A stretch of DNA of 64,000 nt, taken from positions 66,030,001 through 66,094,000 of the forward strand of contig OZ320317.1 in NCBI GenBank assembly GCA_976226885.1, written 5' to 3'. Under the pieces are notes generated by a model that saw nothing but the letters and a program-made list of their open reading frames with translations, was not told the origin of the DNA and searched no databases. A program made the position numbers and the translations under genes. How positions within the stretch are numbered: position 1 is the first letter of the stretch; the number at the start of each line of letters is the position of its first letter. Below are positions 2,173 to 59,589 of the stretch, in pieces. The DNA comes from Iphione sp. A-MEVVRFRX5 (lineage: Eukaryota).

Positions 2173-5100
2173 ACAATCTTTAAACAAACAAAAAGGAAGA
2201 AGAGGAAGATTTCGTTATACCCCCCTACAACCCATTCAATGAATCAGACAGGGTATGGATGAACAACAAAAATATAATCATGGAGAAAATTGGCTGAGGA
2301 CTTGAATGGTCAAGGAGCCACATGAACAGGTTCCATCACATCTAAGGTACTGTAACCGCCAATGTAATCACAGTTGTTTTGGACTGTTTAGCCCTGTTAT
2401 TTTGCATCACATCTATTTTGCAGCTCAATAATTGATCCGTGTCTATTTCATATCTTGATCACTTATGTGATAAATGATTAGTTGTCACAAGGTTTTGTGA
2501 TAGCATTGTTACCCTGTATTTCTTTTATATTGCCACAATACTACATGCTGACTTAAATGTAACATTGCAATGTCACCACATCATTGCAGTATTGCCACAT
2601 TGTTGTTTTATGACGCTCCAACACTATCGATCGCTAATGACATTGACACAATGTCCTTTTCTTAAATGTTTCAGTCACAAACCTGTGGTAATACATGTAT
2701 TATGGCACCGTTGCGCCCTCAACGGGCAATGATTGGAAGTTATCCATGCTTATTAGACGATAACCTCAGAAGTGAAAAGAATTTGATGGGGTAACCTTCG
2801 TAATATAAAGCAGTCGTTGAGTACTTTAAGTTCATTAATATCATGCCTGAAACTGTGCAGCAAATACAATCATTGTGCATAAATCTACCGATACAATTAG
2901 GAAACCATGTTCCGAGGATTTAAAAATGGGACCCTAGTATAAGGCGAACTACAACCGAAACAAGCGACAGAATCAACTTGTAGGTGTAAAAAGGACTATC
3001 CCGGCTAGCCACAACTAAAAGGCTTCCTGACGTCAAACCGAAATGGGCTGATTTCAATAATGCCACGTGTGATGAAAAGCTACTTTTATCAATCGATCAT
3101 TCGTCGGCCGGGTATGAGTTCCTTTCCGGTCCTCATACAAATAATGCCACCAGCGACTTCGCATCCCTTGCTGCTTCTGAGTATGCAGGAAGCGAAGTCT
3201 ACATGACGAGGGGATTGTTCAACAATTACACGGAACCGGATGCACTCGGTTAAGAGGCATCTAGTGGCAAAAAATACAGAGGGAGCAAATCGATCGCTCT
3301 AACAATTCTTTTATTATTTATTTTTATAAATGAAATACCCAAGATAATCTCGAATTAAACAGAGTTTAATACTATCTATTGTATTCAGAAAAGAATGAAA
3401 CACCCTCTAGTGTTCTGGTCCACAGTAAGCTTTCTTGTGTCGAGCTTTCTTCTGTCGTAATTAACTAATTAAGCGACGTCTGTTAGTCACGTATAAACGT
3501 TCGGTACGGGCAGGTTAATCACATACACAATAACCGATGTAACATATCTGCACTTAAATAAAATGAAAAAAAATGGTTGGTTAGAAAGAAGGTCTACAAT
3601 CTAGCTTTCGTGATAACTGTTTGACAGAAACTTCATAAATACTGATAATCGAATCCTGTCTAAGTCATGTACGTCCAAGAGATTAAGTGAATTATTAGGC
3701 CTAATTTTGGGAGTAGATTATTGTCTCGTGACATGGAACCAGACAAGGGGACGGCAGCATAAAATGTAATAATTGTGGTCATTTGACACCTTCCTGAAGG
3801 ATTTTTATATTCATAGCGGCTATTGTATAGCTACCGTGTAAAGTTTCTGAATCATACATAAGCGATTATATGCATTTTTTTTGATATCGGAGATAAGAAT
3901 CTATTTTTCTATGCTATAAGCTGAAACAATGCACTTGACATGTGATAATAATGACCTTTCTCTGATCTCATGTAGTGTGCACAGTAAAATTGGGAAATCA
4001 TATTTGACTCCTCAAGTCAAGGGTTTGGCACGAGAACCTTATCACGTAGGCTCTCGGAAGAAGTCTGTAAAATACAAAGATCTGCTGGTAAAGCTTGTTC
4101 AGATAGTACAGAGTAACTGTAATCGTGCACATGTGAACGATCCCTTATTTTGAGGGGCAGTTGAATCTGACAAATCAAGGGTGGGAATTTCAAGCCTAGA
4201 CAAACAGAGCTATTAGGTATTGGATTCTATGGGAAGGTTAAATTACTGTGTTCATATTGCAGACAGAATTATTTGCTTTTGTATGCATAAAGAAGATATA
4301 CAGTGGAGACCCTGTGTATTGATACCCGACTACAGGGTACACCTCTTAAAATGTAAAGGAATCTCTGAAGAGTATTAAAGCCCTCTATTTCATGTCTAAG
4401 AGTGTCCAGCCACTGAAGACACTCATGTACAATGGACATCTGCCTATGGACACAACTTTACAGTCCAAAACCTTATTATCAGTGGGAACCAACAGATGGA
4501 ATGGCTTGGAGATAGGGGAAGACAGCCACAGACATTACCAGGCAATCCCTCAGATGTAACAGCACCTCTGAATGGTGTGAAAGTTCATGCTGGGAGAAGT
4601 CAGGAGGACCAGGGCACAGTGGCAGATATCTTCCCAGATCTACCAACACCTAAACCCACCAATTTGCATTTACAAGCCTGCTGATTCTTCTCATGCTAAT
4701 CTCTGGTTGCATCTTAGACAATTAATATCATCTCAGTGCTTTCAGCTTGAACATCTGAGGGAACACAGTGACCCCTCTGGTTGTATCTGTAGTTGCATCC
4801 ACTCCAGCCAACCATCCTACCACCTTGGCTGAACCTGTCCCTCGTACCATCCTGATATCAGGAATTGTTACAATTCATGCAAATCTGACCAAAAACGTCC
4901 ATAAAACTTTACTCGTTACTTATGATATATGACCTTTGACCACAATTCAACCATGGGGGATTGGTTGCATTGTGGCATTCAACTGTATTACTACATGTTT
5001 ACTCCATTCTTGGCTACTACCGACCCACCTTACTGCAGACAGAGTCCTTTCAGTGTCCACAGAAGTAAGGCTTTACTGTATTATTAATAATTCACAGTAT

Positions 5101-5730
5101 TTTTTTTGTATTTTTTGCTCCAGTTCCAAGGGCTCAGAGTTGAGTCTTTTAGCACTGAAAAAGCCTAGGGAGCTGGATGTCTGTGCCGGAAGCACTGGCT
5201 ACTATAACATTGGGAATTAGGAGGAGGTATCACCTCAAAAGTGATATGTGAATAGTTATCTATTTTAAATCATGCTGCGAGGAGCTCTGATTTTGCCGTC
5301 TTCGAGCAATAAGTATACATGTACATGCCAAAAAAGAGCATCTGTAAATGAGGCGGGTGATTTCGATGTTCCTACGTGAGTTTCGATTCTATTATGGATA
5401 AATTGAATTCGCTTGGTTTAACACTAGGTGCGGGTTATGTTCTCCTTGCCCTTCCTATGATGTTTTACATCTATAAATCTGTTCCTCTCACATTCAATTC
5501 GCTTCAATATTGTAAATAACAATATTGCTTTATGTCATTTCTCAAACTGTCACGACAATTTCATCTTTCTCAGTAGTATTCTTAATTTCAAGGTTACTAG
5601 GGAAGGAATTGTCAGAAAATTAAAAGACGTTCCACATATACAACAGAAAAATGAAATACATGTACACGTATAGACATTTTTGTATGCAGTTTTTACCGCA
5701 TTCAAAAGCCAATATAAAAATGATCCTTAC

Positions 5731-6907: not shown

Positions 6908-9900
6908 GGTTGTAGGAATGTTTTAACCCTACACGTGACGTAGAGAGTCTTCACGTTGTACATGTATTCATATTGCTGGAGCTGAACTTACGTATAAATG
7001 TACATGAAAAGTATAATCCGGATGAAAATGCAGTTTACTGTAATGGTTTCTTAAGTCGAAAACCTTCCCCGGCATACCTACAGGTTTGCTGGAGAGGAAA
7101 TGCCGTTGACCTTTATCAGTCGCTATATACGAGGGCAGTCCTCCTCTGGTTAATTCCAACTGGGCCTGAAACCCGCTGAGCTCTTTATACGTGGAGAAAC
7201 ATATGGGTGCTCCTTGATCCGTACTTTATCCACAAAGGTCAGCAAATGTTCGGGGTCGTGAGGCACTGTGTGTCTTTCTCCGGAGACGCAACCAGAACTG
7301 GAACTTTGGAACGACGTTCGTGGGAGCGGTAGTGGATTTGGGGGTTGAGAGTGGGGGGGAGGAGTGCGGTTTACCAAGCAGACAGGGGTGGGACCCGACC
7401 CGAGGCTCTCGACCAACCCCTGAGCTCAACCCCCGACCCCGGCTGCTTCAGGACGAAGGTCGCGTCACTCATTCATACGCCCCACTTTCTTTTATACATT
7501 GCTTTCCTCCTTTTCTTTCAGGCGCTTGTTCCGATCGTCACATCTGTTAACACCTGTTAAGTCACAACGGATTTTAAGGATGAATTGCGACTTGATTTAT
7601 TTCCCGGTTTTGGTTCAGGTCGACACGACAGGGAGTACGTCTGTCTGTGAAATATCAGTGTCACTTTTCTGGGTTTTTTTTTCATGTTATCAACAGGTTG
7701 CTAAAAAGGTCGGTTTTGCTTTTCATTTCCCTCAATATAAAAGAATCGTCTTAACGTAGTTTCAACGCCCTGATGCTTTCTGTACTTGTTACTCTGTTCC
7801 ATTAATTGTTCATTATTATCTAGATATCTCTTTGTCTTTCTCTCCTGCCGTATATAAATCCATGACTCGTTCTCAGTTTACCTGTATTATAATCTCTTCT
7901 GCCAGTGCTTCGTATGTCCAGAAGACAGTGCTAATGTGTTGCATACATATATGTATTGTGTCTTGCAGCACACCTTCCAGCGTCGAGGAGAACATGAAGT
8001 CTTTCATGCAGGCAACAATAGGATATCACGATACACAATTCTGGACTTGTAGACTTCTCAGCCAGTCCATCCATGCACAATATGTGGTTCCTATCAGAGC
8101 AATCAGTATCCTGCTGGTAAGAGGATACAGCTTCCTTGGAGAATCCAGACCATAGACAAACCCTTTAGGAGCTTTTGTCCGCCATAGATCCCTACAGTAA
8201 AATGGTACGTCCACACGCCCACAAAACCAATTACATGAGCTTCTGATGTCACGTAGCAACAATACACATGCCCTTGCCAAGCTATTTAAAGTTAATGTGG
8301 TATCATTGGGAGTTGTGGGTCAAAGAATATACGACGTTCAAGACCATTCCCGTGAGCTGAGATGCCATGCATTCCTATGCATGTACACGTTAGCTTGTAT
8401 GGTCGCCGGCACGATTCCTGAGATGAACTCGGGCAACTCAACGACTACACTGTAGGTCCTATACACAATGTTAGCGATTAACTGGGAGCGTGCTTGGATT
8501 CCGAGGCCGAAAGAGGAGCAATACGTGGGTAAATGGCGTATTCCATGGGGGCTCCTTGGGTGGAAATCTATACATGTACTTGGTTTACATGAATGTTTCG
8601 TTGTCATTGGCAAAGTGATAGCGCTCCACAAAACTATCAAACTTTAATACCGATAGCTGGCTCTCACCTGAAAGGCTATACTTAAGTGGCATATCCTTGT
8701 CTTACCTACAGGTGGTACACAATGCAGGAGCAATTGGATGATGACACATAGAGTACTGATGCTCCACTTACTACGTCAGACTACGTGACACATTAAATTG
8801 CTCCTATGGTTACTGTCATACCAGCTACTGATGGTTTTTAAATCCTTATTCCCCCGAATGGAATACATGCATTACCATTCAACCGAGTAAATCCTCTCCA
8901 AGCCTCATGTTTCAATAACTTCCAAAAGAATCAAACATGAGTTACAAACCATCTAAGGCTAAGGATGGTTCTAAGCCTATGATTTGACGGATCGTTAGCT
9001 CCAGGAATCCAGAATGACATGTGAGGGTATCCTGTTTTACATGTTGACTCCCCTGTAGGTAAAATTCCAGGCCAAGGTGTTGATGGGGGTATTTCTGGAG
9101 AGAAGTTTAAGAGTGTGCATTCAAGGTGGGCCGGCTATAGACTGAGGGTGTGAATGACGTAGCGCGGGCTCACAGACCTCACTTGCGGAGGCGAGGGGCG
9201 GTTTCGTCAGGTACAGTGCAGGAACTGGTAGCCACATGAATGGAATGAGTGGGGGCAGGTGAGGAGGTCAGTACGGGGGGGATGGGGAAGAGTCAGTCAC
9301 TATGCACGTTCTCGGGGAACGAAGCCACCCCCGGGTTTCCTGACAACCACCCTATATATAACACACAAAGGTCGCTGGCAACATTACGCCCCTACGCGGT
9401 CGCTTGAAAAACTAGAACCAGTCACGTATATTTCGCAGTTACAAAGGGGGAAACTTTGACGGCACTAAAACATCTTAAATACTTTAAGAGTCCAAGCATG
9501 ATATTCCGCATTTGTACATTTGTTCCTAATTGAGGGTGAAGTGAATCATTTCATGTTAAAGGTACTTTGTTGCTACTAATTTGAGACGGAGATATACTTG
9601 CCAGAACTAGCACATGTCTCGCGCACCTGCACTGCCTTTGACCACTACGGGGTTTTGTGCATACGAACAGGTGATAAGGTGCACTGCCATTCATACTGTG
9701 GTCAGTACAGGGCGCTGAACTGTGCGGAGACTATAAGAAGGTTCCAGGAAATTCCTTAGGAAGTAGGTTTGTTTGCTTCATGGTTAGCAAGAGGATTAAC
9801 CTAGACTACGTACATTTCGCCGCTTTACACAGAAGTATTAGGCCAAATCTGAAACTAACTTGGAAACAACTGTACTTCCAATCACTCGCCTAAGCAGGAT

Positions 9901-10204
9901 TCGTATTAATTCATTTTATCATTCACTGCGTCAGATATTTTTCATTTCCCAACAGGATTTTCATCCTCGCATGTATTACAACTGAATAAGGGAAACTGGA
10001 TATCAATGTATTTATATACATTAACCTGTATAAATTAACATGCACAGGCGTTATTTATATATAACATTTTACATCCACAATAAGGAGCCGCATTACACAT
10101 AATTATACTTCCCACTTTGCTAATGTGATTATATAAACAGGATGCTGACATGTACTTCAGACCTGCCAAAATGTGGTAACTTCCTATCTAGTGACGGATG
10201 CCTA

Positions 10205-10370
10205 CAGTAAAATCTCGCTATGGATGGACACCTTTGGTTCCTAGTGAAGGTGTCCCTATTTAGGAGGTATCCCAAGTTCAGACTATAAATATAAGACTTC
10301 ATTCTGGCAACATCTGTCCCAATTAATCGGGTGCCCCTTTTTTGAGTGGCCAAATACAAAGGTTCTACTG
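10205..10370. mobile_element. Tc1/mariner-pogo-type MITE, 166 bp, TA target duplication
   Basis: ta|CAGTAAAATCTC ... AGGTTCTACTG|ta: imperfect TIRs with flanking TA on both sides. Confidence 0.7.
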
Positions 10371-11657
10371 TACATGAACAGGCATTAACGCTAACATATC
10401 CATGACAACAGCTACTACAAACATTTCTCTTTGTAGCATATGGAAGAAAAGTATGATGACACTCTTCCAATTTCGTGAAGTGAAATATGCCTCATTCCCC
10501 CTAGGGATATATAGTTCTGCAGTAACTCATCAGGAATTCGCCACATTCGTGTTAAAACGAACAGATGAGGTGGTGTGGTCTGTGGTAAGCAGAGCGGAAC
10601 CTCCTGCACTTTTCGTCAGGTGGATTAATCCTGAGGTCAATGCGGGTGATTCAGTGTGAATTTCCCGTAGGGCGTGACCCCTAGTCTAATAAAGCATGGT
10701 TTGCAAGTGCAACTGAGTGTTAAAGAGGTGCTTAATATTCTAGATGTGTGACGCGTCACGTGATTGATGGGTGACTCTTAGTGGATTATGTTTTAGGACG
10801 AGGACCCTCTATCTCTCTCAACTGAAATTTACCTGCCCCTCTCTGCCTCTCTATTTCTGTCTCTGACTCTGTATGCCTGTCTCTTTCTTCCAGTCTCCTT
10901 GACCTCACTATATCTCCACCAGCTTACCTCTGTGTATTGTTCTGTCTCGTTGTTTCTTTCTCCCTTCTGAGCTCCCGCAATCTCATTTTGAATATAACAT
11001 GCATTTTTACACGTACATGCACAGTATTTTGTATTATAAACAAATCAATGTGATCGTTATTTCAAGCACAGACCCTTTTTGTATATCATTTATAAATAAC
11101 AGAAGGAGACTAAAACAGTTCTTTTTTTATAAATACACAACATATTGTCAATATGTTGTAATTCGTGGAAATGAAGAAGAGAGATGAACAGTATGCATTT
11201 GTTCACATTACTTGTCGAACGTCTAAAGAAGACATGTACATAATATACAAGTACACATAAATATACTAACATGTATGCGTCTAGATGGTCGCAAAACTAT
11301 TGCTAATATGGCGAAATAAGACAATACGGCGTACGGAAAAGTGAATCCCATAGCATGGCAATTAGAGACAGATCTACACATAAACACCATAATGCACGAC
11401 TATTACTGCCATCTGCTGGAGCCCCTAAACACTATCACGAAACCTTTTTGACCTCAGACATGGCCTACCGCGCCATCTGGTGTCCATGATATGAGCTAAG
11501 ACTGAGTCTCCATGGGGTAGAAAGCAGTTTGTTACCTGGTATACAGTAAGTTTAGTCTGGCGCAAAAGAAAGGTATGATTGTTTTCCTACATTCTGGATT
11601 TTCCTCAGAACAATATTGACTGTTTTGGGGAAACGACTGATTTACATCCCTTTATCA

Positions 11658-11976: not shown

Positions 11977-12364
11977 GTTTGGTGTTGATATAATGTATCG
12001 CATGTGTTATTACATGATCGGATGACCACTTGTATTGTACATACATGTATGGGGATGGATATTAAAATGTAGGCCTATATTAGATTACCATGTAGGTGTG
12101 TATCGGATGACCCATCAAGCGTGACTAGGTTTATCATTTGCTGGGAAGTGCACTTATCCAAGACCGACTCCTGTTGTCCAGCGACCAGAAAGAATTGATG
12201 GAATTTCTCCCTATCTGCTCCGACATTAATTCAACTTCCATGGAAACTAGATAAGATCTAAAAATATTTCAATACGAACTAACAAGTAGATAAAAATAAC
12301 AAGTTCACCGCCGTCAAGCTTTAGCTTCGCTGGAGATATATCCTCATAATATATCCTTAGTTAC

Positions 12365-12475: not shown

Positions 12476-12833
12476 CTGGGGAAAAGAAGGGCCTGTATGC
12501 ATGAGTCGTTGTAATTCATGGGCGTGGACTAGTTTAGTGATACATGTACATGTGCATCATTATTCCAGGTTGCACCCTATATGTCTCCTTTATTATTAGG
12601 ACTAAGCACCACAGACTGGTCAACTTTGTTTGAGCTTCTGGACAGTCAGGCTTTATTCCACGTCCACCCACTACTATTCTTTATACTTATTTTATACACC
12701 TGTTTCCATTTGTTTATTAGCTCACTTAAGGAGATGTCTCTCCGTAGCTTACTCATTAAATTTCTTAGCTCAGCCTTATCTTGCTTTGCATGTGGCTTCC
12801 TTGGTAAGGAGGAGCAGCATTGGCGGCACTTAC

Positions 12834-13310: not shown

Positions 13311-13314
<4 letters not shown>

Positions 13315-13371
<57 letters not shown>
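13315..13371. repeat. (GA)n microsatellite
   Basis: Perfect dinucleotide run. Confidence 0.95.
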
Positions 13372-13373: not shown

Positions 13374-13894
13374 TTGGGGCAGAGAGGTACAGAATGAGAG
13401 CGATAATTAGATATCGTGCGAGTAGTTGATCTACCCAACACAGAACAGACACACCATATTCAAGAAATGAAATAATTCTACGGTTCCAGCTATTTTGGTA
13501 TTTCTAATACCAGGTTGATATGGACATAAATATACATGTATCACCATAATACCCACATCGATAATATCACCATATTCAGGATTCATTTCACTGGTGGAAA
13601 GGTACGGGGGACGGGGTGAATAACCCCAAGTACATAGGGGGCTGTTAACCCTTTCTCTACTCATCTCGGCTATGGTGGTATCTAACCAAAGAGACTCTGG
13701 TCACGTGGCGCTCATGGCTCTTCCGAGGCTACCTATTAGATTAATATTGATCTACTTGGAACTGCAGGGCTGATGAAATAGTTAACAAGGCTGAGTCTTG
13801 TTTATGTTATACATACATTACATTACACACAAGGGAAGAGCCTGCTCACATTCTGCTCTTGCTCCCTTTACCAGATCCCGTTGACTAGACTGCC

Positions 13895-14158
13895 TCCTGT
13901 GCCTCCTTATAATGTACGTCCAGACAGCCTCCAGTATCTCTGTATACTACCTCGAGTGTGCATTGACTAACTCTAGTATCTATTTATACTACCCGAAGGG
14001 TGAACGTTATACATCAGGTACCTCCTTATATTGCTCCAGTGTGGATTGGCTTTCTCCGGTACCGCCTTATACTACCTCCAGGGTACTTTGACTACCTGCT
14101 TTACCTCCTCCGAATATTACTTCCAGGGTAGATTGATTACCTCGTGTGCCTCCTTATA
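13895..14158. repeat. Degenerate minisatellite, about 42-bp period, about 6 copies
   Basis: Units like TATACTACCTCCAGGGTACTTTGACTACCTC...CCTCCT recur. Two further copies lie at about 15548-15630. Confidence 0.7.
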
Positions 14159-14339
14159 CAGTGGGATCCCTATTTGTGACCATCCCTTGGGTCCAGCCAA
14201 AAGTGGTTGTATTACTGAATTTGGTCGCAAATAGATGACTGTTAATACAAGAAATCAACACTTCTGTTCCAAGCAGAAGTGGTCGTATATTAGTGAGCCT
14301 GGTCACAAAACGATGTGGTTGCAAATGGGGTTTCCACTG
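14159..14339. mobile_element. Tc1/mariner-pogo-type MITE, 181 bp, TA target duplication
   Basis: ta|CAGTGGGATCCCTATTTGTGACCA ... TGGTTGCAAATGGGGTTTCCACTG|ta: 24-bp imperfect TIRs. Confidence 0.8.
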
Positions 14340-15034
14340 TACAACTTGAAGAGTGAATTGTATGCCTCCCACACCCGGTTGTACATTAGAATCTCGACAA
14401 TATAGTCATCCTCCATTCGAGCAAAGAGGCCTCAACAACCTGTTGTCTGCACGTCTGAGTGTGTACCAATGTGGTCTTAACGATTTGCATGATCTCTGAG
14501 GAAGAATTACATAAGAGGCGTGGCCAACTGAAGTCGTCGACAAACTCTCTGATAAGCTCACCGTTATGCTTAACCCTTGTTACTTCAATGCCTTTTGTGG
14601 CTGCCTCCTACCCCAGTGGGAAGTTCTCTCTCTATTTCATGACACCTGGCACACTTGTCTACTGGTGATTTCACTTTAAGGCCCGGTTTCCTTACATGCG
14701 GCGATGTCTGTCAGCATTTCTATGTTGTGAATTATGTCATTCTTGGTTTATAGGCTATCAGTAAGAGGTGTTCCATACCTGTGGTGATGCGTGTGTGCAT
14801 TGCTGTGCGTTGACATGGGTTACCCATTTTCGGTCCCTTCCTATAAATTTGCAGCGCAACACACAGCAATGCACAGCAGTATAGGGAGATGAGGGTATCT
14901 AGAAATCATATTTCTTCACATTTAGTCACATTTATTCACAGTTCTTCACTTTTGGATGTGATTACTGCACATATCCATACATTTCCACACAATGCCTTTT
15001 TTCTGGAATTTTCCTACACATTTTTCCCATTTTG

Positions 15035-15155: not shown

Positions 15156-17912
15156 TTTTAGTGGTTTTTCACCATTTTACATATTTTTTCCCCTCCTTTA
15201 TGCACACAAATGCACGCATGTATGGAACACCCCTCTGCAGGAGGGTGCAGGAAAAAACAAATGCACATCGCTGCAGCTGGACCTCTCCCACACTCTCCTG
15301 CACCTCACTGCAAGTATGGAAACCGAGTCTTAATAGGATATGTTTAACTGTACAGTATTAGGGTATGTCACTTTGGTACCCAATATTCAACAACCACAGA
15401 GTGAGGCAACAACAGTTTTGATCTGCCTGCAGTCCTGAGGTTCCTCCAAATGAAAATAAAATATAGAGGCGAACGGTTCATTCTGAGCTAATTCCACTGC
15501 ATTTGCCTGCCGCCTATATTTTGCAGTTGACCACATAATGAATTTCCCCTGTACTATCTGCAGGGTGCATTGAATACCTCTTGTATATCAGTATACTATC
15601 TCCAGGGTGGATTCAATTGTTCCTCCTGTGGCTGCATTGTTTCACCAAAATGCAGTCAACCGGTCAAGACAAGAAAGGGGACCTATGACGTCTATTGTCT
15701 CCCACCAGCCACTCAATCAATGGTTATTTTCTGCCTGGGTGAGCAGACTATGACATAGCTTTGTTTCAAATATAAAAACAAAAGGACTCTATGTATGTCA
15801 GTTTGTATGTGCAATCACATATTCAAATTTATTAATTTGACCTATAAATCACTCGGAATGACACAAAAATAAACCAATGTCAAAAGTCCATATGGGGAAC
15901 AGCCTATTGAAAATAGAGCATTTGATTCGATGGTTTAAAAGGAAATACACCCACAAGATTACGATGGAGATCAGACGATCAAACAGCAGCATTCCTGAGG
16001 TACCCCCATCCCAGTAGTCTCTGATTCCCTCGTCTCATATACCAAGGAAAGGAACTGGCAGGCGATGGATATAGGGTCCGGATTTTAGTGTCAATGTCGT
16101 TTAAAGTTCTGTTCAGACCCATGAACTTTGCAAAAAGCCATATTTGTGTGTGACCAGTTTCTAAACTGGGTTTCGCTTCGCTAATTCGAAAGCCCGTTGG
16201 TCTCATTCATCAACAAGGAGGGTCCCCAGGGGCTGATCACTAATTGAGTAGTTCTTGTGAGGCCCAAAAGATATCTTGGTACGCACGCATGTTCACTGAA
16301 ACGTATCAAAAGCAACCGAACCTGATGATTCTTTGTCAAAATACAGAACCACCGCACCAGCCTAATCACCGCTAGTTAGGCAAGTTCCACTTCAATACCA
16401 CTAGCATCGTTTTGTATCATACGCAGTTGTTTGGGGAGATTAAGTAAATCCTCCCTTGAGGATAATGACATTTTGAACTATCAGACCAAAATACGATAGT
16501 ATTGTGAGAAGGTTAAAAGTTATGATATGTATAAGAAGTGAGACTTGAACTTTTCAAATGGGAGTTCAATTGTAGACTGAGCCAGCCAGAGGAAAACTCA
16601 CTGGCAATACAGAAGGACGTGAACCGAATTGATTTCCTGATAAAAAATGATTCCATAACTTCGCAACAAAGTATAAATTCAGGAAAAGTTTCAGACGAAT
16701 TTGTACAGGATGGGGCCAACTTCACTGAATACGACAATAGAAATTCAATAATGAGACCCTTAATTTGATAACCACAGAGAAATAACTATAGGACATGTAA
16801 TTCATTCACATGTGACATAGGAAGATATTTTCGATCAATTTGGCGGCCTTAAGGTTTTCACTGGAAATGTAAATAGTGTCCTCCTGAAGTGAAAGCTTTC
16901 ACCCAGGATATCTGACACTGTATATGATTGATTCCTATTACTTCTTCAGCTGTGAGTGTGACTGCCGGCCATATTTCTATTGCAGAGGCAGTTACTTGTC
17001 TCTCCTTTTGTTATGCTGACTGCTCGACGTAGGCAGGTGGCACAGCCGACATGGGGGGAGGGAGGTGAAAGGTGGCAGGAAAGAATGAGTTAACAGTACA
17101 GCAATGTACATAACTGTCGACGATAGGCCAATACAATAGATACGTCAATCATATACACCTGTCTGTCCTTTTAAAAGAGCACACCCAAGGCCGGCCGCTG
17201 CTAGAAAACAGATATTGTAGCCAGGTACAATAAGGTTACGGATATGGTATCATAATATCATTTTGACCTCCACATTCATTCATTGCTGTACACATGTCAT
17301 TATATAAAACCACCCAGTGCCATTTTAGTGGCTACCATAACAAATGAAGCTAACGGTGAAATGTACACTGATCAGTATTTCAATCTACTTATTTTACATT
17401 TTCTAGAGCTTTTTTCAGTCGGTATTGTCAATACTTTTATTTGTATGACAGTGGTATAAACTAAGCCTCTCATAATGTAACTGAAAAATTTCAGTTATGT
17501 CATAAATGGGATAGGTAACTGAATATCGTAATTCAGATTGCACCTATGGGTACAAAAAATGTCGAGGGCAATTCCTGTTATTTTACTCCATCAGAAAACT
17601 TTCAAACTGAGAAGAAATCCTGAGCTATCATTCAGTATAATCAACAAAAACATATGGACGAAATGACATTTCTTGTGGATATGGGGCTAAACTGTCAATT
17701 ATGTAGTGGTAACACTGCCATCACCCGAATACTATCGAATGTAAATGATCTTTAATAAACAGCACTCTTATGATGGCCTAGAATCAATTTACAGTTATAC
17801 CGTGGACTACTATAGCTTGGCAATTAACCAGGTTTGTAATGTATGTATATCGCTTGTTCGTCCCTGAAGTAGGTCTTTGGTATAACGACACACATACAAA
17901 TACATGTATGTA

Positions 17913-19241
17913 GGGGAAAGGTGGGTAATTTGGACCAGTGGGTAAATTGGACCACATCAAGATCTCTGATTTTCAGGCAAAGAAGGAATATGAGCACCAT
18001 CCAACAACAAGTGATATACCTACACAATGTCTCAGAACTAAGATATGGTGGCTTCAAAAAAACATGTGCCAAACTGAGACACATTATTGGTTTTATGTCT
18101 CACTGATCTAATTTTACCAATTATATTTGGCAATGTAGTTGTGAGCACAAAGTACATAGAGCCCTATTATAACTTTATATCAATACTGTCTTACTCAGAA
18201 GCAATACTAACATCAAGTTTAGTCTCTGTCATCTACACAAAAATGAGCGGAAAACATTTTTCTTGGAGATTGGTGTGTGGGTAAATTGGACCACTATAGG
18301 GAGGGTATATTGGACCACTAGTCAAACTACCTGACTCAGTCCAATCTACCTACACAACCATTACCTTTTCTTTTATCTGTTAAGCAGACTTTGGAGAAAC
18401 CTTGTGGTATTCATATTTGGTCTCAACATGGAGCTATCATATGATGACAATCTATTTTGAACTAAGATAGTAAATGTAGTGCAAGTTTATGGAACTCCAT
18501 GATGTGCCTTTTTCTACTGTAAGTATTTTTTCACTGAAATGAAAGGCATCATTTAAGAAAATAAATAGAGAAACATTTGTTGGTTTTTATTTATTTACTT
18601 TTGGTTCTAACATATTTTAGACTTTTAATGACAAGATAATTGGTATAGATGTGTGGTAATTTGCCCGGGTATTCAAGAAGGTCATCAACAAAGCTCCTAT
18701 CATTAGTGCAAGGAGTTTTTTAGGCCTGAGAGGTTATCTTGTCAAATAAATGTTTCCAGTTTTTAAAATGTTTGGTGAAACATTTTAAATATACATGTAC
18801 ACATAGTTTATAAAGTTGCAGTAACAGGTATGAAAGGAATCTAATACCCCAAGAATGCAGGTCCCATTCTGTTGTACATATTTTGATGGTAGAAGTCACA
18901 AAGTCCATTAGCATTATAACTAATAGTGACCAAAACCTTTATAAGCCATGCTGTTGTTCATGGGACTTGCAATTCTAGGACCTAGATTCATTTTACACCT
19001 GACTGTTCAGACTATGGCACCTGGTCCAATTTACCCTCCCTGTTCTGTAAACTGTACCAGTCATAAAAAATTTTCAATTGCATTTTACTCAAAGACTAAT
19101 GTAACTAAAATTCCCCCAGTTTGTTAAAATATGCTGCAGCCCCTATTGCTTCAAAATAAGCAAAGTTTTTGTACAGTGGCTTAGACATTTTGATTTTAGA
19201 GCATGTTTTTCTTAGGGGGTCCAAATTACCCACCCTTCCCC
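17913..19241. mobile_element. Non-autonomous pogo-like DNA transposon (1.33 kb)
   Basis: ta|GGGGAAAGGTGGGTAATTTGGACC ... GGTCCAAATTACCCACCCTTCCCC|ta. Subterminal GGGTAAATTGGACC repeats at about 17941, 18279, 18305 and inverted at about 18340, 19023. No intact transposase ORF. Confidence 0.8.
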
Positions 19242-19443
19242 TACATTATATATGAGGAAGGGTGGTACCAATGTCTGTGTAACGAACTTGAACATTCTCA
19301 CAATATTTAAATTACAGGATCTTCATGCATGGTTGTCATGGTGGACACGACTTCCCTCGTTAAAAACATGCATCCTTGTTGGGCAAAAACACATGTACAC
19401 AAAAAATAACCTTTCCCTGAGACACGTCTCCTTGACAACGTAC

Positions 19444-20922: not shown

Positions 20923-23900
20923 CTGAAGCATAAGAGCGATGTTTCTTTAAACAGACACATTTCTGTATATATCTCTGGCCGGTAAATTCCAACGTATACA
21001 AAATGTCTCTCGAAACTGTCTCTTGAGAACGATGCTTGCCTTATTATATATAGATATAGATACCCATGTAGAGATGGTTCTCAAATTCTTTTGAATAAAG
21101 TACACAAAGCCTAGGATCCTACATACATGTACTTCAAAGTTAGCGGTAATTGATTGTCAACATCCAGACTCTGCAGGTGCGAATCTCCCATGGTGATCTG
21201 GTAAGTGTAACTTAGGATAGATTTGGGAGTCATACCCCGAGCCCAATACTGCACCCTGCCCTAGATGATGTTGGTTCGTATAGGTAAAGCAGATCTCATT
21301 TTGCTTATTTAGGAGTCGTGCAAGGCGTCGTGCGAAATACATGTATATATTAGCGTGATGATAACCAACTAATATAGGACAGCTGGGTAACTATACGTAC
21401 GCATAAACTGATCTTCGTTCGCAACATACTCTAATATTGCTCTTTATCTTCATTCTTCGATAAAGAGCTATCGTTACGATATGAATGCCTTGAGAGCATT
21501 GACCTACAAATGATTATATATAGGACCTATGTAAATATCTAGCACACATAGTTAAACTGAACATAGCCATCCAAGGGAATACTCAGACTAGAATACACGT
21601 ATTCAAGATGACTAGTCAAACTTGTGACGAAGGCGCATCCTATCTAATTCAAATCATATCGTCAGAAATATAAGTCCTAATTCATGTTACATGAAACACG
21701 AGGGTACTGTAGGCCGAATAGGCGGGCTACTGCTTCCATTCGTTAACACCACTGACTCTGAAATGTAAATATGCATATTCACGAGTACAACTGTTTTGTG
21801 AATGTATATATACTGTCTCCGACAGGGATCAAGTCTTCATTATCCAAATGTTCCTCTGAAGTCCTACCATTAGGGAATGCAAGTGTGTATTGTTTTACTC
21901 CACATGTGTGTATTGTATGCATTTCTTCCCAGTGATACTTTCCACGTGTAGCTGTCGTGTTCTTCGCATAATTTATATGGACATATAGATCTGCTGATTT
22001 AATTAACATACGCACTTGTAGGTGACGAGCAAAAATATACATAGACCTATAATTATCCAGATGTTTATAATAGAGCAACTTGCTCATAATAAACTGCTCC
22101 GCATACACTTTTTCCTTTGCCAACAGTAGTGCGCCTTGGCTTGTTTAGGCGACATGCATGCCTAATGCTTGGCGATGTCCTCCTTGAATAAAAGCCATAT
22201 AATTCTAGACGATCCTTGTCTCTTGTGTGTAGTAACTGTAGTGTCCATCGCCACTAATTATCCACTGCCGTATTGAATGCTTGCCTACAGCTAATTATTT
22301 CTCTTGCGGCCGGTTTTGTATCCAACATTGTGTGTATATATATTCAGAACTGCCTTTGTCAGATTAGTACGGTTTCCTGAAATCTCAGACATATCCTTTT
22401 CCAATTCTACGAAAAAGTGCAGTGAGGAGTAACCTGAACAATATTAGCCTACGTCTGCCAGGAGGACGTCTTCCTTGTCATACATGAGTCAATAACATCC
22501 TTCCACAACGAGACTTCCTATTAATATCGACTATCTGTGTGGATGTACATGTATTCTTTCGTAAACTTGTCAGTCGAAATCTTTAGAGTCTATATTAGTA
22601 CCACGTAAAAGATTCTAATGTCCATTGTCATTATCTCCAATCATATCCATGTATTGCAAGAAGTGCATGTTCTGTTTCCGGCCATATTGACGTTCTTATG
22701 TGAAATGGCTTGCTCTATGGAAATGTGCGGGCTGTTTCTGTAGTTCACATCCTCATGAACATCGCAATGCTCCACGATAAGTTGTAGGGATGACAAACAA
22801 TAAGGCTTCACCTCTTTATCCCCATAATATGCACGTAATAGGTTATTTCTGCCAATGTTTTGGGTGATATCCATTTAACCCTCTGCGAAGTTTAAACACG
22901 TACGCAGTATGTGGTATCTAGACAACGTCTGCTCCAGGTTTCCCTTGTATAAGACGCAAGCATCTGCCTCCTTTTTGCGATGCAGCAAGGTTCAACTTAG
23001 GCTCCGATTAGACTGGTATGCCACTATCACCAAACTGGCTTTCCCTGGACAAATGAACTTTCCTGTTTATCTACACAACTGTTCTAATAGCCCTATCACA
23101 GACCGGCCTTGTAAATAGATCTATACGCTGTGGGTCGGATGATACTGGGGGGGGGGGGGGATTTAGCAAGATTGGCCATGCACGCACCCACATCGTGAGG
23201 GAATGGAGGAATGTATGTCGTGAAGGAAATGAATATTCGGTTGACCTTTTAATGATGATTATGTTTCATTTAGCGTGAAGCAAATAAAAGAGAGAAACAC
23301 TGGAGAGTGAGGTAACGGATTGAGCCTACTGTTCTGTGCAACAAATATGCTACACATATACATATGATCAATAACCTATCGGGCTGATTCTGTCAATCAA
23401 AGGCGTCTTTCAGAGTGGAATACGCCAATAATTATATACCCATGCTTGCGTAATGTTGATAATATTAACCTGAACACCATAGTAGTATTGAATAAAGTCT
23501 ATTAATGTTAACCAGTCATACCCAATTCAGTTAGATGTTTTATTTATGGATTATACACGTGTTCTGTCTAGTTTATCATAAGTATTAATTAATTAAGCAC
23601 TTTGCCCGTCGAGCATGTTTCCTCTTTTTATCGCTCTGAGGTATATTAAAAACGTATGGCCCGGTGCATCTAAATGTATCTCAAAGTGTTGTAAGCTTTT
23701 TCAGGCCCGTCATGCAATATTAAATCAGCATATTTATGTATCTACTGTCAATATTTTATATACTTCTGCACTCAATTCCTTTTACTTATTCAACAATATC
23801 ATGGAGGCCTATCCTGAAATGGTTTCAAACTTTACATGTCTTACGATGTTTAATTTCAAAGACACCTAATTTGTTGTCAAGTTGCTGGAGTAGCTGTTAA

Positions 23901-24868: not shown

Positions 24869-26914
24869 CATGATTTTATGCAGCGAATAGAATATCGAAA
24901 AAGAAACATCAAAAGTAACTACCACAACTTTAAAAATAGAATTTACACTCGAAGGCGAGTGGCAAATCTAATAGTTATTGTATATAGACACTGGCAAATA
25001 CATGTATATTTATCTCTTGGTGGTGTGCCACACAGAATTAAGATGTTTACTTAGTCATAATCAACACTGACTATTGAACAGATCTCGCCAGCATAAAAAG
25101 ATTATTTCAATATTTACGGGTCATGCCTGAGAATCCCGAAAGTCACGAGCTTCTGTCTAAATTAAGGACGCAGCTTCCATGTTAACGTTGCATAAAAATA
25201 GAGTGAAAATAGTGCATACAGTTCCCTGCCTGTTAGTCGCCGCCGTGTGTGATGACATGGGTATTCGCTAAGCTCACGTCTAATAGTTTTGTTTTACTCA
25301 TTACTTTCGATTTCGAAGGTACAAATATAACCATTGGTTTCCTGGTGTCTGTAGAAATTATGATGGAGAATTCTTAAGTAAACAACGCATGGACTACTTT
25401 TTACAGTCGGGGAAAACCGTAATACATGTCTATGTACATCTAATCCTAACATCAAAAATACCTAGGGTATAAGAGTAGCATCCGAATCGAATATCCTCCC
25501 CAGCAAAAAGCACGCATTAAATTGTATTTCTGCGCTAGTTCCTGCCTTAGGCGTAAGTCTGTGTCTCGACAACCATGCCTAATCTGAAGACGTCGTCTGG
25601 ACAGTGGTCGCAGTGTTATCTGCTCCGTATAAAAACACAGTTCAAAGGAGCGATATCGAAAACTGATCGGCTGAATTAACTCTTGATCTACTGTCCCTCC
25701 ATGGAAACGACGCCAACTATTGGAAAGTAGGATAACTAACTGTTCAAAGAGCCCGAAGAAAAAGCAGCTCCACAACGTCTGAGATTCTATTTATGTGGCA
25801 TTGCATCTGAGGCCATTTCTTTTGAAGCAGAAAAAGGGAGACTTCTGAATGTCGGAGGTCAGTGTATAGATGTTTATGAGTATTTGTATTTGCCCTACCT
25901 AAGTGTATATGCATGTGTGCATCTTCAACATAAAACAACGGGGTTGATATGGCTTTAGAAAGGTAACCCTTCCATCTCAGTATTACCCGCGGACTAGGAT
26001 GACTGATCGGTTTTGCAAGTAGTAAAATTGCAGGCTCTTTTTATATTCATACCTGGCCCATGATGAATAAACATAGTCATCGGCATGCCCTATGACCTCT
26101 ACACTCTACATATTTTTGAAGCTACGATAGCGTAGGTCCACAGGATTGAAATGGCATGGCTGTAACATAATGCAGCTGTCAGTATAATATAGAGTACAAA
26201 ATGAATCAGCCTTTCGTTCAGCTTTTTTCATCTACACTGAACAAAGTGGTACCGATTTCTGATGAAATAAAAGGAAACATTTCCAAATTCACGTAGGACC
26301 AGGCTGTAAAGATTAAGACACTAACTTGGATCCTATGTTTACGTTGTGCGTGACGTCACAAGCAGTCCAGTGTAGTCTGGCAATCTGCAGATTTGTCAGT
26401 TTCTCAAGGGGAAAAAGTATGTAAAAGATGAGGACACTTGATGGGAGGAGATTAAAAATCTTTGATATAAATCCTGCTCAGGGATTTTCCTAACACTACT
26501 AAGCAACCAAGATCAATGTGAGGCAATAAGATCCTTTCAGCAGTAGACCTCCCCCCCCCTGCCCCCAGATTTCGCTAGACATAACCACCATCCTCCTAAT
26601 GGATCTCTTCATAATTTAAACTTAGAAGTCCGAAGTAAACGAAACAAGGCTGTATTAAAGGTGACGTTTTCCTAAAAGCATAGTCAATTGATCGTGCTTG
26701 CTCCATGTGTATCGTTACTTCCGTGGTGTTCTCGATGGAAATATGTTGCAATCCTGTCCAGCCATGTGTCTCGCAGTCCATAGAAATATCGATGTTTTGA
26801 CCTCTAGGGAACAAGAGGCGTGAAACATGATCTACATTGAGGCGTGGAACGTCACCTATATGGAGTAGCTCGTTACCCGCTAATGGATTTGAGACCTTCC
26901 TGAGAGTCGCTCAC

Positions 26915-57520: not shown

Positions 57521-57560
57521 CTCAGGAACAGCTCTGCAGATATATAGATCAGCTATATCA
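57521..57560 (-). CDS. 40-nt exon of gene A (SDIADLYICRAVPE)
   Basis: Acceptor ttataaccag|TGAT, strong donor CCTGAG|gtcagt. Phase 2 to 0 bridges exactly the 60978 exon and the giant exon. Confidence 0.55.
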
Positions 57561-59589
57561 CTGGTTATAAATTATTCCCCAGTGTTTATCACTTATCTGT
57601 CCTCTTACCTACTGCAAAAAAATTGAACAAGTACTGGACAGAGCGGTACAAATTATATACTCTATAGATACAAACAACAAATAATACAGAAATACAAGGG
57701 AATTACATCTCCACTACATGATGCAGAGTGTGCAGAGCAGAACGATATGTAACATATTGAACTTAATGTACAGGGCCATAAAAAATTGTACTGTCAGAAA
57801 GGACTAAGATTAAAACCACTAGAAACTCAGCTGGATCTCGGATTAAAACGTTCATCCCAAGAAATGACAAAATATGAAAATCCATAGCCTACAAAGGTAT
57901 TTGAATGTGGAACCAGATAGATCCAATGTATAGAAACATGACAGTTGATCATGAATTTGATATAGCAACACAAGTTTTATGTACAACTGTTTTCAATGCT
58001 ACCTACTGACGTGTTACTTACTCCTAATATCTAGCATTAAAACGAATCAATCAACTGTTTGCTAAAACAAATGCCATCATTTCATTTTCGTAGCTCATTA
58101 ATTTCATTGCATATTTCCCTTCTTTTCACCTGGTTATAAGGTAAAAATTGGTAAATATGAATTTGTATAGCCTTCTGTACTAGGAAAAAGGTCTGGTACG
58201 ACGATATTTTGTTATTATTATCATTATTATCATTATTATCAGGAGACATTTCTTGTTGCATTACAAAGACATTTCTACCATAGACTGGTGTTATATAACA
58301 CGAGCTTACTCTATACTCTAACCTCTTCAAAAGGCGTGGTTTGTACTTTTCCTTAGAGTAAATAAAACAGTGGTCCCTGTTAAAATAGCTATAGTCCAAG
58401 AAAAAAAGGTTTGAGGTTCCTGTACTTACTAAACTTAAAATTACGCTGGAATTTGCAAAGATGCATTTGTTCTTTGTCGGTTTATTCAATGTTTGGAAAT
58501 TGAGGAGTTTGCACGTATGTATACTGATAGGGCTATCCCCACCTTTCTGAAGACATATTCATATCTCTGTAGCCATGAATATAATTATTTAAGCGCATAG
58601 TTGTCTACTTCATTATATAGATGGCTATGCTTTTTCACAAAGAATTATATCCATACATGTATGTATATTATTATATTTAGGTGTGGATTTCAATATGTAT
58701 GCATGTGATTTCCCTTGAAAATTACCAACCAATATTAACTGAATAATTTGTGAAATAAAAGTGTAAGTATACTCAACAGCGACATTGAAATGCTCTTTAA
58801 ATTGACACACCAACAGTTTTACAAATTGTCAAAGACAAACTCAAAAAGAATTCTTTACTATTGCACAGGAGGACTCCAGATCTAGAATTTCAGAATATCT
58901 GCCTCTGAACAGATTTAGGACTTTGGATTTGCTGTCGATCAAGCCAGTCAAGAAGACCCACAGTCTGACTGATACCCACTCTGTGTAGCTACGTTAAGGT
59001 CACCACATCATCATCCGAGGCCCCCCCCGAGACCCTCTGTGTAAGCAGGTGACTGTCTACACCTAACAGATGTAAATTTCTATGTGGTCAGTAAAAGGGC
59101 ATGCTGAAACTATGCCAGACCATATTCCCTGTATAGGCAAGTGAAGAATTATACCTATCCTCGCTGCAGGCTGCACTTCCTATGCCGGAAAGGGAAGAGG
59201 CCCTATATACATTACAGTAAGATTAGACTCTCTGTATGTTAGTCAAATACGTTAACAAAGTTAAGGCTATCAGGAAAGGTTGTTTATTGCACAGTGTACA
59301 GACATAAGTGTTAACATCTACATATATGGTAGGTACAGCTGGATTCTGTTTATAAGCATATGGGGTATCTGTAATTAGGATTTATTGTAGTAGAGTATGG
59401 TTTAGTGTCTTGAATAATAAGAAAGATTCTTTATGTACATCTGTTAGACTTGACTTGCAAAAAGATCAAGGTATCGACATTCTTGGGTGCAGATACAGAA
59501 CAATATTATTTCCTTCTGTCACCTCACTGAAGTAGTTTTCACAGAGAGGATTAAACAGTATTACACTACCTCCCCTGAATGCTTGTTGA

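What the first reader, a model, noticed from the sequence alone, without database searches (positions are those of the whole stretch)
2692..58661. TACATGTA excess may be a fossil record of MITE excision footprints
Seen: at least 25 copies of the palindrome TACATGTA by eye (e.g. 2692, 5316, 5657, 6959, 8571, 12042, 12541, 13533, 17901, 18792, 21124, 21338, 22546, 24999, 37241, 48892, 51680, 58654). About 2 are expected from base composition, and none was seen in the large exons. Overlapping forms TACATGTACATGTA occur (48892-48905). Also seen: two MITEs bounded TA|CAGT...ACTG|TA (10205-10370, 14159-14339). Established: Tc1/mariner excision leaves the duplicated TA plus 2-3 terminal bases, and TA+CA+TG+TA is a described Tc1 footprint. 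Inference: the octamer accumulates through insertion and excision cycles of these CAGT-ended elements, with the tandem form marking re-use of a footprint TA. It could then have been co-opted as a regulatory motif.
Basis: partly seen in the sequence, partly recalled or inferred. Interest (0 to 1): 0.7.

Follow-up and report, generated by a model that had tools for sequence, protein, structure and literature searches.

The report
Over-abundant TACATGTA, probably old transposon scars
One eight-letter palindrome, TACATGTA, is far commoner in this animal genome than chance or any look-alike word allows; it is most likely an old, decaying record of jumping genes cutting themselves out of TA sites, but no direct case of such an insertion could be shown.

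Summary
The window has 28 TACATGTA sites against 1.95 expected, all reader-listed positions are present, and both TA|CAGT...ACTG|TA MITEs are real. The excess is genome-wide: 258,438 sites, against 41,996 for the mirror-order twin TATGCATA. The scan flagged this word in at least eight other windows of this genome.

The excess belongs to this one word. It is commoner than its single-transition intermediates, (TA)4 and spaced palindromes, so transition decay of alternating pyrimidine-purine (YR) tracts fails. It is not debris of (TACATG)n arrays. Most sites are solitary, in unrelated flanks, inside alternating tracts.

The footprint reading is the best explanation but remains circumstantial. In favour:
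- The word equals TA+CA+TG+TA.
- The flanks match the target preference of a TA-inserting family in this genome.
- Decay products indicate an old, unselected population, similar in age to the CAGT MITEs.
- One related species lacks the excess.

Against:
- No 6-bp insertion at a TA was found in about 168 kb of young paralogous DNA or at a favourable site.
- CAGT-tipped elements are about 25 times rarer than octamers.
- The commonly described Tc3 scars (TACATA/TATGTA) show no specific excess.
- The tips of the abundant pogo elements were not seen.

Nothing supports co-option as a regulatory motif.

The parts
2692..2699 (.). TACATGTA site, solitary
   Evidence: unrelated flanks
5316..5323 (.). 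TACATGTA site followed by CATG (TACATGTACATG)
5657..5664 (.). TACATGTA site, 38 bp outside ORF 5702-6907
6959..6966 (.). TACATGTA site, 52 bp outside ORF 5702-6907
8571..8578 (.). TACATGTA site, solitary
10203..10372 (+). Old MITE, TA|CAGTAAAATC...GGTTCTACTG|TA (the coordinates include both TAs). Its 3' TA is followed by CATGAA, a one-off relative of the octamer.
   Evidence: the best genome paralogues are only 69-74% identical
12042..12049 (.). TACATGTA site, solitary
12541..12548 (.). TACATGTA site followed by CATGTG
13533..13540 (.). TACATGTA site, solitary
14157..14341 (+). Old MITE, TA|CAGTGGGATCCC...GGGGTTTCCACTG|TA
   Evidence: the best genome paralogues are 76-84% identical, with about 1,577 first-look candidates
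17901..17908 (.). TACATGTA site followed by TG, then the TA target duplication of the young element (TACATGTATG|TA|GGGG)
17911..19243 (+). Young 1.33-kb non-autonomous element with inverted repeats, TA|GGGGAAAGGTGGG...CCCACCCTTCCCC|TA. Used here as a clock and as a measure of TA-target preference.
   Evidence: 454 copies carry both anchors; copies are 94-97% identical
18792..18799 (.). TACATGTA inherited inside the young element, so not a local event
   Evidence: 18 of 20 paralogues carry the intact word and the other two carry a single-base variant of it, with no gap
21124..21131 (.). TACATGTA site, solitary
21338..21345 (.). TACATGTA site, (TA)n on the 3' side
22546..22553 (.). TACATGTA site, solitary
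24999..25006 (.). TACATGTA site, solitary
29855..29862 (.). TACATGTA site, solitary
37241..37248 (.). TACATGTA site at the end of a (TA/CA) tract
39355..39362 (.). TACATGTA site, solitary
40521..40528 (.). TACATGTA made by substitution inside a satellite of 62-bp period. Sister units read CACATGTA and ACACATACAC, with no gap.
40850..40857 (.). TACATGTA inside the same satellite
45261..45268 (.). TACATGTA site in a YR-rich tract
47235..47242 (.). TACATGTA site, solitary
47707..47714 (.). TACATGTA site followed by CAGT
48892..48905 (.). Tandem form TACATGTACATGTA (two overlapping octamers)
   Evidence: it is the only such 14-mer in 264 kb
49277..49284 (.). TACATGTA site followed by TGTG
51680..51687 (.). 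TACATGTA site, solitary
52005..52012 (.). TACATGTA site preceded by CATGAACATG, 356 bp outside the 1193-aa ORF
58654..58661 (.). TACATGTA site followed by TGTA

Best explanation
Most TACATGTA copies are old scars left when cut-and-paste transposons that insert at TA and have CA...TG tips (Tc1/pogo-like elements and their MITEs) excised. Insertion duplicates the TA. Excision with a staggered cut leaves the tip bases on both flanks. End-joining then gives TA-CA-TG-TA, a 6-bp gain at a former TA.

The events happened mainly at TAs inside alternating pyrimidine-purine tracts, which are the preferred targets. They largely stopped at least about 0.1 substitutions per site ago, and the scars have since decayed neutrally.

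A minority of copies have other origins. About a fifth to a quarter is the ordinary background level for alternating words. Some copies arose by substitution in satellites, and some are carried inside transposons.

Shown: the word-specific excess, its context, its age signature, and the presence and age of CAGT-tipped TA elements. Inferred: that the word arises as an insertion, and which elements made it.
For: 1. The excess is specific to this word.
- There are 83 sites in 264 kb, against 7 for the mirror-order twin TATGCATA, 28.5 for each single-transition intermediate and 48 for (TA)4.
- The spaced palindromes TACA(TA)kTGTA have 4 sites each, and the median of the 81 alternating words is 17.5.
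- Genome-wide the counts are 258,438 against 41,996.

2. The word is TA plus the first two and last two bases of the TA|CAGT...ACTG|TA MITEs in this window. A Tc1/mariner-family transposase cuts exactly at the 3' ends and 2 nt inside the 5' ends (PMC2170065). Tc1 and Tc3 are listed as 2-bp-overhang enzymes.

3. The flanks are R at -1 (79%), Y at -2 (63%) and R at -3 (76%). The 21 insertion sites of a TA-inserting family in this same genome show R 95%, Y 71% and R 62%. Of 24 TA-element insertions seen, 4 sit in or next to an octamer or a one-off relative, where about 0.8 is expected.

4. Sites are solitary. The CATG density within 60 nt is at background (70 against 60.9), apart from spikes at 6 and 12 nt.

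5. Transversion neighbours carry an excess of 77, against 76 for the intact word. That ratio of 1.0 compares with about 0.5 for steady production, so the population is old and not maintained by selection. The CAGT MITE families are similarly old (best paralogues 69-84% identical). A young family (copies 94-97% identical) gained none.

6. The excess differs between lineages: 0 in 44 kb and 6 in 52 kb in two related species, against 27-44 per 100 kb here.

7. Pogo-type transposases, whose elements target TA and usually have CAG tips, are abundant. There are 3,156 candidates, and all 150 scored are full-length.

8. TAGGCCTA, the scar predicted for the GG...CC-tipped TA family, is the only other enriched non-microsatellite palindrome of this form (12 against 2.9).
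Against: - No direct case of CATGTA gained at a TA was found. In 454 copies x 369 bp of a young family there were none, where about 6 are expected under steady production. At that family's best target context there were also none: 5 copies gained only 1-4 bp.
- Recognisable CAGT-tipped TA elements are rare: 3 in 264 kb against 83 octamers. Scars would have to outnumber surviving elements by at least 25 to 1, and by more once decay is allowed for.
- The two most common described Tc3 scars, TACATA and TATGTA, show no excess over unit-permuted controls (170.5 against 144.5-196.5). That test has low power.
- Scars of the 3-nt and 4-nt type show no excess.
- No Tc1-type DDE_3 domain was found.
- I never saw the tips of the pogo elements.
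- The TAGGCCTA support is confounded by a MITE whose own ends read AGGCCT. Other TA-flanked families have tips whose predicted scars are not enriched.
- Flanks that alternate purine and pyrimidine are also what any process tied to alternating tracts would give.
Confidence: 0.45

Rival explanations
1. The word is carried inside many transposon families or other ancient dispersed repeats and was multiplied by their amplification. On this view it is inherited, not made on the spot.
For: The site at 18792 is inherited with a family of roughly a thousand copies: 18 of 20 paralogues carry the intact word and the other two a single-base variant. My 264-kb sample is too small to detect families of up to a few thousand copies. 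Only 119 of 5,228 tiles had any non-local match, so most sites could not be tested for paralogues.
Against: The flanks of the 83 sites share nothing except purine-pyrimidine alternation within about 6 nt. No position exceeds 57% for one base, and positions beyond -7 are at background. Many unrelated families would not give a common alternating flank, and one old family would give longer, stronger flank identity. This rival also does not explain why this word and not its twin would be carried.
Confidence: 0.15
2. An unidentified process specific to this word acts in alternating pyrimidine-purine tracts and does not involve Tc1/pogo excision. Candidates are scars of an unseen TA-inserting element with self-complementary CATG tips cut with a 4-nt stagger, or a repair or template-switch product peculiar to (TA)n-like DNA.
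For: The outcome is strikingly uniform. Only the full 8-mer is enriched, and the partial scars are not. Non-complementary 2-nt overhangs would not be expected to give that, whereas self-complementary CATG overhangs would (inference). 55 of 83 sites lie in alternating runs of 12 nt or more. Donor elements of the CAGT type are scarce.
Against: No TA|CATG...CATG|TA pair in 264 kb has inverted repeats beyond chance. The best is 16 of 30 matches, the same as the direct-orientation control. Spaced palindromes are not enriched, which argues against hairpin-templated correction. No such process is known to me.
Confidence: 0.2
3. The word is the product of ordinary microsatellite dynamics: transitions within (TA)n/(CA)n tracts plus slippage of a TACATG hexamer.
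For: Site 40521 arose this way in a satellite. The octamer alternates pyrimidine and purine throughout and sits in such tracts. Alternating words as a class run about 3 times above expectation. About 15% of sites have another CATG 6 or 12 nt away. Long arrays exist in both phases: 380 and 148 for the 20-mers.
Against: As the main cause it fails. The double-transition product is 3 times commoner than either single-transition intermediate and 12 times commoner than the equally probable mirror product TATGCATA (genome-wide). There is no CATG clustering beyond 12 nt. The other phases fall to the class level once overlaps are removed. It plausibly accounts for the background fifth to quarter of sites.
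Confidence: 0.07
4. The word is a functional protein-binding site kept by selection, for example a palindromic transcription-factor or chromatin-architecture motif.
For: It is a perfect palindrome of the kind dimeric factors bind. The same word is reported as a promoter motif in Phytophthora (papers listed, not read in detail). From my own memory, untested here, Iroquois-class homeodomains prefer ACATGT cores.
Against: About 258,000 evenly scattered sites (one per 4.6 kb) are embedded in simple alternating DNA. One-off decay products are more abundant relative to intact sites than even neutral equilibrium predicts. A related species has none in 44 kb. No new sites appear in a young repeat family.
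Confidence: 0.05

Closest known systems
Tc1/Tc3 excision footprints (2-nt staggered cut)
   Same: TA target duplication plus CA/TG tip bases retained at the donor site. The enzymes are listed as leaving 2-bp overhangs, and cleavage 2 nt inside the 5' ends is shown for the family member ISY100.
   Different: The most common Tc3 scars are TACATA and TATGTA, with tip bases from one end only. Here only the two-end form TACATGTA is enriched. No Tc1-type DDE_3 domain was detected in this genome.
Sleeping Beauty / mariner canonical footprints TACAGTA and TACTGTA (3-nt stagger)
   Same: The same logic: TA plus tip bases plus TA, at a TA target lying in bendable, alternating DNA.
   Different: Those 7-mers are not enriched here: 28 per strand against 20-27 expected.
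ISY100 donor re-ligation junction TATATA
   Same: A uniform scar formed because the 2-nt overhangs are complementary. This shows how a single word can dominate.
   Different: CA overhangs are not self-complementary. A uniform TACATGTA would need either retention of both overhangs or a 4-nt CATG overhang. Neither is shown here.
pogo/Tigger elements and their MITEs
   Same: They insert at TA and usually have CAG tips (my own knowledge). Their DDE_1 transposases are very abundant and mostly open-framed in this genome.
   Different: Their termini in this genome were not seen. Intact copies suggest recent activity, yet a young repeat family carries no new octamers.
TACATGTA promoter motif of Phytophthora
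   Same: The identical octamer is reported as a transcription-factor site (papers listed).
   Different: That is an oomycete promoter element at specific genes. Here the sites number about 258,000, are scattered in simple DNA and are decaying.

Membership tests
Tc1/mariner-pogo excision footprint | The sequence equals the duplicated TA plus the terminal bases of the element plus TA | tested here: met
   TACATGTA = TA+CA+TG+TA. The window's MITEs are TA|CAGT...ACTG|TA.
Tc1/mariner-pogo excision footprint | It arises as a small insertion at a pre-existing TA, so an allele, orthologue or paralogue shows plain TA or the element between two TAs | tested here: inconclusive
   No +6 CATGTA event was found in 454 copies x 369 bp of a young family or at its best target context. 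Those copies postdate the inferred activity. No sequencing runs were served, same-species records are withheld, and older paralogues could not be fetched.
Tc1/mariner-pogo excision footprint | Donor elements with matching tips and TA duplications exist in the same genome, in adequate number and at the right time | tested here: inconclusive
   They are present and of matching old age, but rare: 3 per 264 kb against 83 octamers. Pogo transposases are abundant but their tips were not seen. Tc1-type DDE_3 is absent.
Tc1/mariner-pogo excision footprint | Companion scars of the described spectrum (TACATA/TATGTA for 2-nt cutters) are also in excess | tested here: inconclusive
   170.5 per strand against permuted controls of 144.5-196.5. 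No excess is visible, but one as large as the octamer's would be hidden in the background.
Tc1/mariner-pogo excision footprint | The flanks follow the transposase's target-site preference | tested here: met
   The R-Y-R|...|Y-R-Y pattern appears at octamers and at 21 insertion sites of a TA-inserting family here. This is not discriminating, because alternating tracts would give the same pattern.
Microsatellite / cryptic-simplicity word | Its frequency is similar to words with the same units in another order, and lower than that of its mutational intermediates | tested here: not met
   83 against 7 (mirror word), 28.5 (intermediates) and a class median of 17.5; 258,438 against 41,996 genome-wide.
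Microsatellite / cryptic-simplicity word | Sites are remnants of tandem arrays, with neighbouring units in register | tested here: not met
   CATG density within 60 nt is at background. Only about 15% of sites have a CATG at 6 or 12 nt.
Selected protein-binding motif | Maintained by selection and conserved in position or abundance between related species | tested here: not met
   Decay products exceed the neutral-equilibrium expectation. There are 0 in 44 kb of one related species. Positional conservation itself could not be tested.
Word carried by dispersed repeats | Sites share extended flanks with paralogous copies that also carry the word | tested here: inconclusive
   This is true for 18792. 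No spanning paralogues were found for 80 of 83 sites in 264 kb, but the sample cannot detect families with moderate copy numbers.

The most novel reading that the evidence does not exclude
The octamer is a countable fossil record of germline excisions. There are roughly 216,000 surviving scars, and possibly several times more originally. They come from an ancient burst of TA-inserting cut-and-paste elements and outnumber the surviving elements by at least 25 to 1. If so, a simple word count measures how often DNA transposons moved out over evolutionary time. The near-exclusive full-length scar would point to an unusually uniform repair outcome, or to a 4-nt self-complementary CATG overhang, which I did not find described in the papers I could search.
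Probability: 0.4. Interest if true: 0.7.

Novelty: new variant of a known kind. Interest (0 to 1): 0.5.

Why it matters
Excision footprints are known from individual loci and from laboratory assays. I found no description of them shaping the word composition of a whole genome.

If the reading holds, the commonest non-microsatellite 8-mer of a 1.18-Gb animal genome is a tally of past excisions. That would give a direct handle on an otherwise invisible quantity: the turnover of cut-and-paste elements, as opposed to their standing copy number. It would also bear on germline repair outcomes, and on how much short-indel variation transposons create at TA sites.

If the reading fails, there is a strong, unexplained mutational or structural bias specific to one word, and that would deserve its own explanation.

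Tried and rejected
- **Polymorphism test.** The look-up of sequencing runs listed no run.
- **Paralogue test.** I anchored two conserved words of the young 1.33-kb family and asked for +6 spacing. The 369-bp interval gave 2 of 454 copies, both local tandem duplications.
- **Wider sampling.** Older families could therefore not be aligned.
- **Self-BLAST of the 83 sites** found spanning paralogues for only three of them, one inherited and two in a satellite.
- **TAGGCCTA as a second predicted scar** is enriched but confounded by a MITE with AGGCCT ends. I kept it only as weak support.
- **CATG-tipped TA elements:** none with real inverted repeats.
- **Scars from 3-nt and 4-nt staggers:** no excess.
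- **Hairpin-templated palindromes:** rejected by the spaced-palindrome counts.
- **Decayed hexamer arrays:** rejected.
- **Pogo copies in my sample:** none, so their termini remain unseen.
- **Orthologue contigs** are only 44-50% identical at protein level. That is too distant for site-by-site alignment, so I used them only for word densities.
- **Pfam** gave nothing for the window's long ORFs.

Full report
**Observation.** TACATGTA occurs 28 times in the 64-kb window, where dinucleotide-preserving shuffles give 1.95 (maximum 6). The flanks of the 28 sites are unrelated to one another. The word is the commonest non-microsatellite 8-mer of the window, and each one-mismatch neighbour has only 1-10 sites. 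Both MITEs are as described, TA|CAGT...ACTG|TA at 10203-10372 and 14157-14341. The assembly gap at 32484-32624 is more than 2.6 kb from the nearest octamer, so it does not bear on the count. I did not fill it, look it up or test continuity across it. The window is G000:C11:66030001-66094000 of a 1.18-Gb animal genome. Genome-wide there are 258,438 sites, one per 4.6 kb. A scattered 200-kb sample from two other chromosomes has 55 against 4.75 expected. Earlier notes of this scan flagged the same word in at least eight other windows, and one follow-up favoured scars. I treated these notes as leads only.

**Is the excess specific to this word?** The octamer alternates pyrimidine and purine throughout, and such words are generally about three times above expectation here, so composition-based expectations overstate the anomaly. 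I therefore used internal controls in 264 kb (window plus sample).
- TACATGTA has 83 sites.
- Its mirror-order twin TATGCATA has 7. The twin has the same bases and the same TA/CA/TG units, is palindromic, and needs the same number of transitions from (TA)4.
- The two single-transition intermediates have 28.5 each, (TA)4 has 48, and the other double products have 17.5.
- The spaced palindromes TACA(TA)kTGTA have 4 each.
- The median of the 81 alternating words is 17.5.

Genome-wide the twin has 41,996 sites, close to the composition expectation, against 258,438. That gives a word-specific excess of about 216,000. Other phases of the hexamer, such as CATGTACA and ATGTACAT, fall back to the class level once overlaps with the octamer are removed. 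Independent transitions in (TA)n/(CA)n tracts therefore cannot be the main source. CATG density within 60 nt of the sites is at background (70 against 60.9), apart from spikes at 6 and 12 nt that involve about 15% of sites. The octamers are therefore not debris of decayed (TACATG)n arrays.

**Context.** 55 of 83 sites lie in alternating runs of 12 nt or more, where chance gives about 19%. The pooled flank reads R at -1 (79%), Y at -2 (63%) and R at -3 (76%), often TA units, and fades to background by -7. A minority of sites have demonstrable other origins.
- Site 40521 aligns without a gap to CACATGTA and ACACATACAC in sister units of a 62-bp satellite, and 40850 lies in the same array.
- Site 18792 is inherited inside a young transposon: 18 of 20 paralogues carry the intact word and two a single-base variant, with no gap.

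**Direct tests of an insertion origin.** A young 1.33-kb element with inverted repeats, TA|GGGGAAAGGTGGG...CCCACCCTTCCCC|TA, lies at 17911-19243. Its copies are 94-97% identical. Its 21 sampled insertion sites show the same R-Y-R|TA|Y preference as the octamer flanks.

I anchored two conserved 12-mers 369 bp apart. 454 copies have near-normal spacing. Only two have +5 to +7 bp, and both are local tandem duplications, not CATGTA at a TA. Steady production at the rate needed to maintain the present density would have given about 6 events in that 168 kb.

In the family's most favourable context, the alternating tract around its inherited octamer, only five copies gained any bases. The gains were 1-4 bp, from slippage of TA or TACA, and none was CATGTA.

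So whatever makes the word has been essentially silent since this family spread. Polymorphism could not be examined because no run was listed. Same-species records are withheld from the contig look-up. I therefore have no single demonstrated case of TA turning into TACATGTA.

**Age and candidate donors.** I applied the same mismatches to the mirror twin as a baseline. On that baseline the 16 transversion neighbours of the octamer carry an excess of 77 sites, against 76 for the intact word. A ratio near 1.0 (roughly ±0.2) exceeds the roughly 0.5 expected for steady production with neutral decay. It indicates that production ended at least about 0.1 substitutions per site ago, or about 0.25 for a single burst. 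It also argues against selective maintenance.

The two CAGT-tipped MITE families are similarly old. The best paralogues anywhere in the genome are 76-84% identical (about 1,577 first-look candidates) and 69-74% identical (122 candidates). Such elements are scarce, 3 in 264 kb against 83 octamers.

A domain census found no Tc1-type DDE_3. It found 3,156 candidates for pogo-type DDE_1, and all 150 scored were full-length, mostly in open frames of 300-680 aa. No pogo copy lies in my sample, so their termini were not seen.

**Other predicted scars.** Among the 16 palindromes of the form TA-xy-y'x'-TA, only three are enriched: TACATGTA (12.5x), the microsatellite word TATATATA, and TAGGCCTA (12 against 2.9). 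TAGGCCTA is the scar predicted for the GG...CC-tipped family. However, three of its 12 sites are the ends of a 335-bp MITE that itself reads AGGCCT...AGGCCT. Other TA-flanked families have tips whose predicted scars are not enriched. This is weak support.

Scars expected from 3-nt or 4-nt staggers of CAG(T) tips show no excess. No TA|CATG...CATG|TA pair has inverted repeats beyond chance.

**Relatives.** The 1193-aa disordered ORF at 52368-55949 has orthologues of 44-50% identity in other assemblies. I walked along two of their contigs.
- Species B has 0 octamers in 44 kb (1.2 expected from its own composition; about 12 at this genome's density).
- Species A has 6 in 52 kb (1.8 expected).
- This genome has 27-44 per 100 kb.

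So the size of the excess differs between lineages.

[quoted passage not shown] SB and mariner cut three nucleotides inside (PMC7827188). [quoted passage not shown]

I found no paper describing TACATGTA as a footprint, nor any describing a genome-wide footprint word. The 6-mers TACATA and TATGTA show no excess here over unit-permuted controls (170.5 against 144.5-196.5). The background is high enough to hide an excess as large as the octamer's.

**Synthesis.** Three rivals can be set aside as main causes:
- substitution decay of alternating tracts;
- decayed hexamer arrays;
- hairpin-templated palindromes.

A selected motif is unlikely. The decay products are too many, a related species lacks the excess, and the sites number about 258,000 in simple DNA.

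The scar model explains the following:
- the identity of the word;
- its solitary occurrence at TAs in preferred target contexts;
- its neutral decay;
- its age matching the CAGT MITEs;
- its absence from a young family;
- its lineage dependence.

The model remains unproven because no insertion event was seen. It has three quantitative tensions: donors are scarce, the outcome is almost exclusively the full two-end scar, and the many intact pogo genes have left no recent scars. I put it at about 0.45. The remainder is split between an unidentified word-specific process, carriage inside old repeats, microsatellite dynamics (real, but a minor share) and a functional motif.

Noticed in passing
window 17911-19243: A young non-autonomous DNA transposon of 1.33 kb, TA|GGGGAAAGGTGGGTAATTTGGACC...GGTCCAAATTACCCACCCTTCCCC|TA. 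Copies are 94-97% identical, and at least 454 carry both test anchors. It inserts at R-Y-R|TA|Y sites.
   Followed up: yes
window 59623-60000 and beyond: Another young dispersed family begins here. All but one of the 40 matches to it are 92-95% identical over the last 378 bp of my query. I did not determine its full extent or type.
   Followed up: no
window 39550-41086: A 1.5-kb unit flanked by TA with a perfect 14/14 inverted repeat (TAGAAGAGCGCGGA...TCCGCGCTCTTCTA). It encloses the minisatellite of 62-bp period at 39885-40947, so it looks like a TA-inserting element carrying a satellite as cargo.
   Followed up: partly
window 51305-51564: A 256-bp MITE-like unit with a perfect 14/14 inverted repeat, TA|GTATTTGATGAAAA...TTTTCATCAAATAC|TA.
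   Followed up: no
L038:8295-8629; also L022, L037, L039: An older 335-bp MITE family, 72-84% identical between copies, with termini AGGCCTAAACAAAAAA...TTTTTTTTAGGCCT. Its target duplication is unclear. It inflates counts of TAGGCCTA.
   Followed up: partly
whole genome (G000): Pogo-type DDE_1 transposases are very abundant and mostly intact: 3,156 first-look candidates, and 150 of 150 scored are full-length, most in open frames of 300-680 aa. The Tc1-type DDE_3 domain gave no match at all.
   Followed up: partly
window 52368-55949 (- strand): A 1193-aa serine/proline-rich, apparently disordered ORF in a GC-rich island (57.6% against about 40%). It has no Pfam domain but has clear orthologues of 44-50% identity in other assemblies. 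Its function is unknown.
   Followed up: partly
L001 flanks of the young element copy: Two TAGGCCTA words lie within about 50 bp on either side of one copy of the GG...CC-tipped element. They may be the ends of a tiny GGCC-tipped MITE, or local scars.
   Followed up: no
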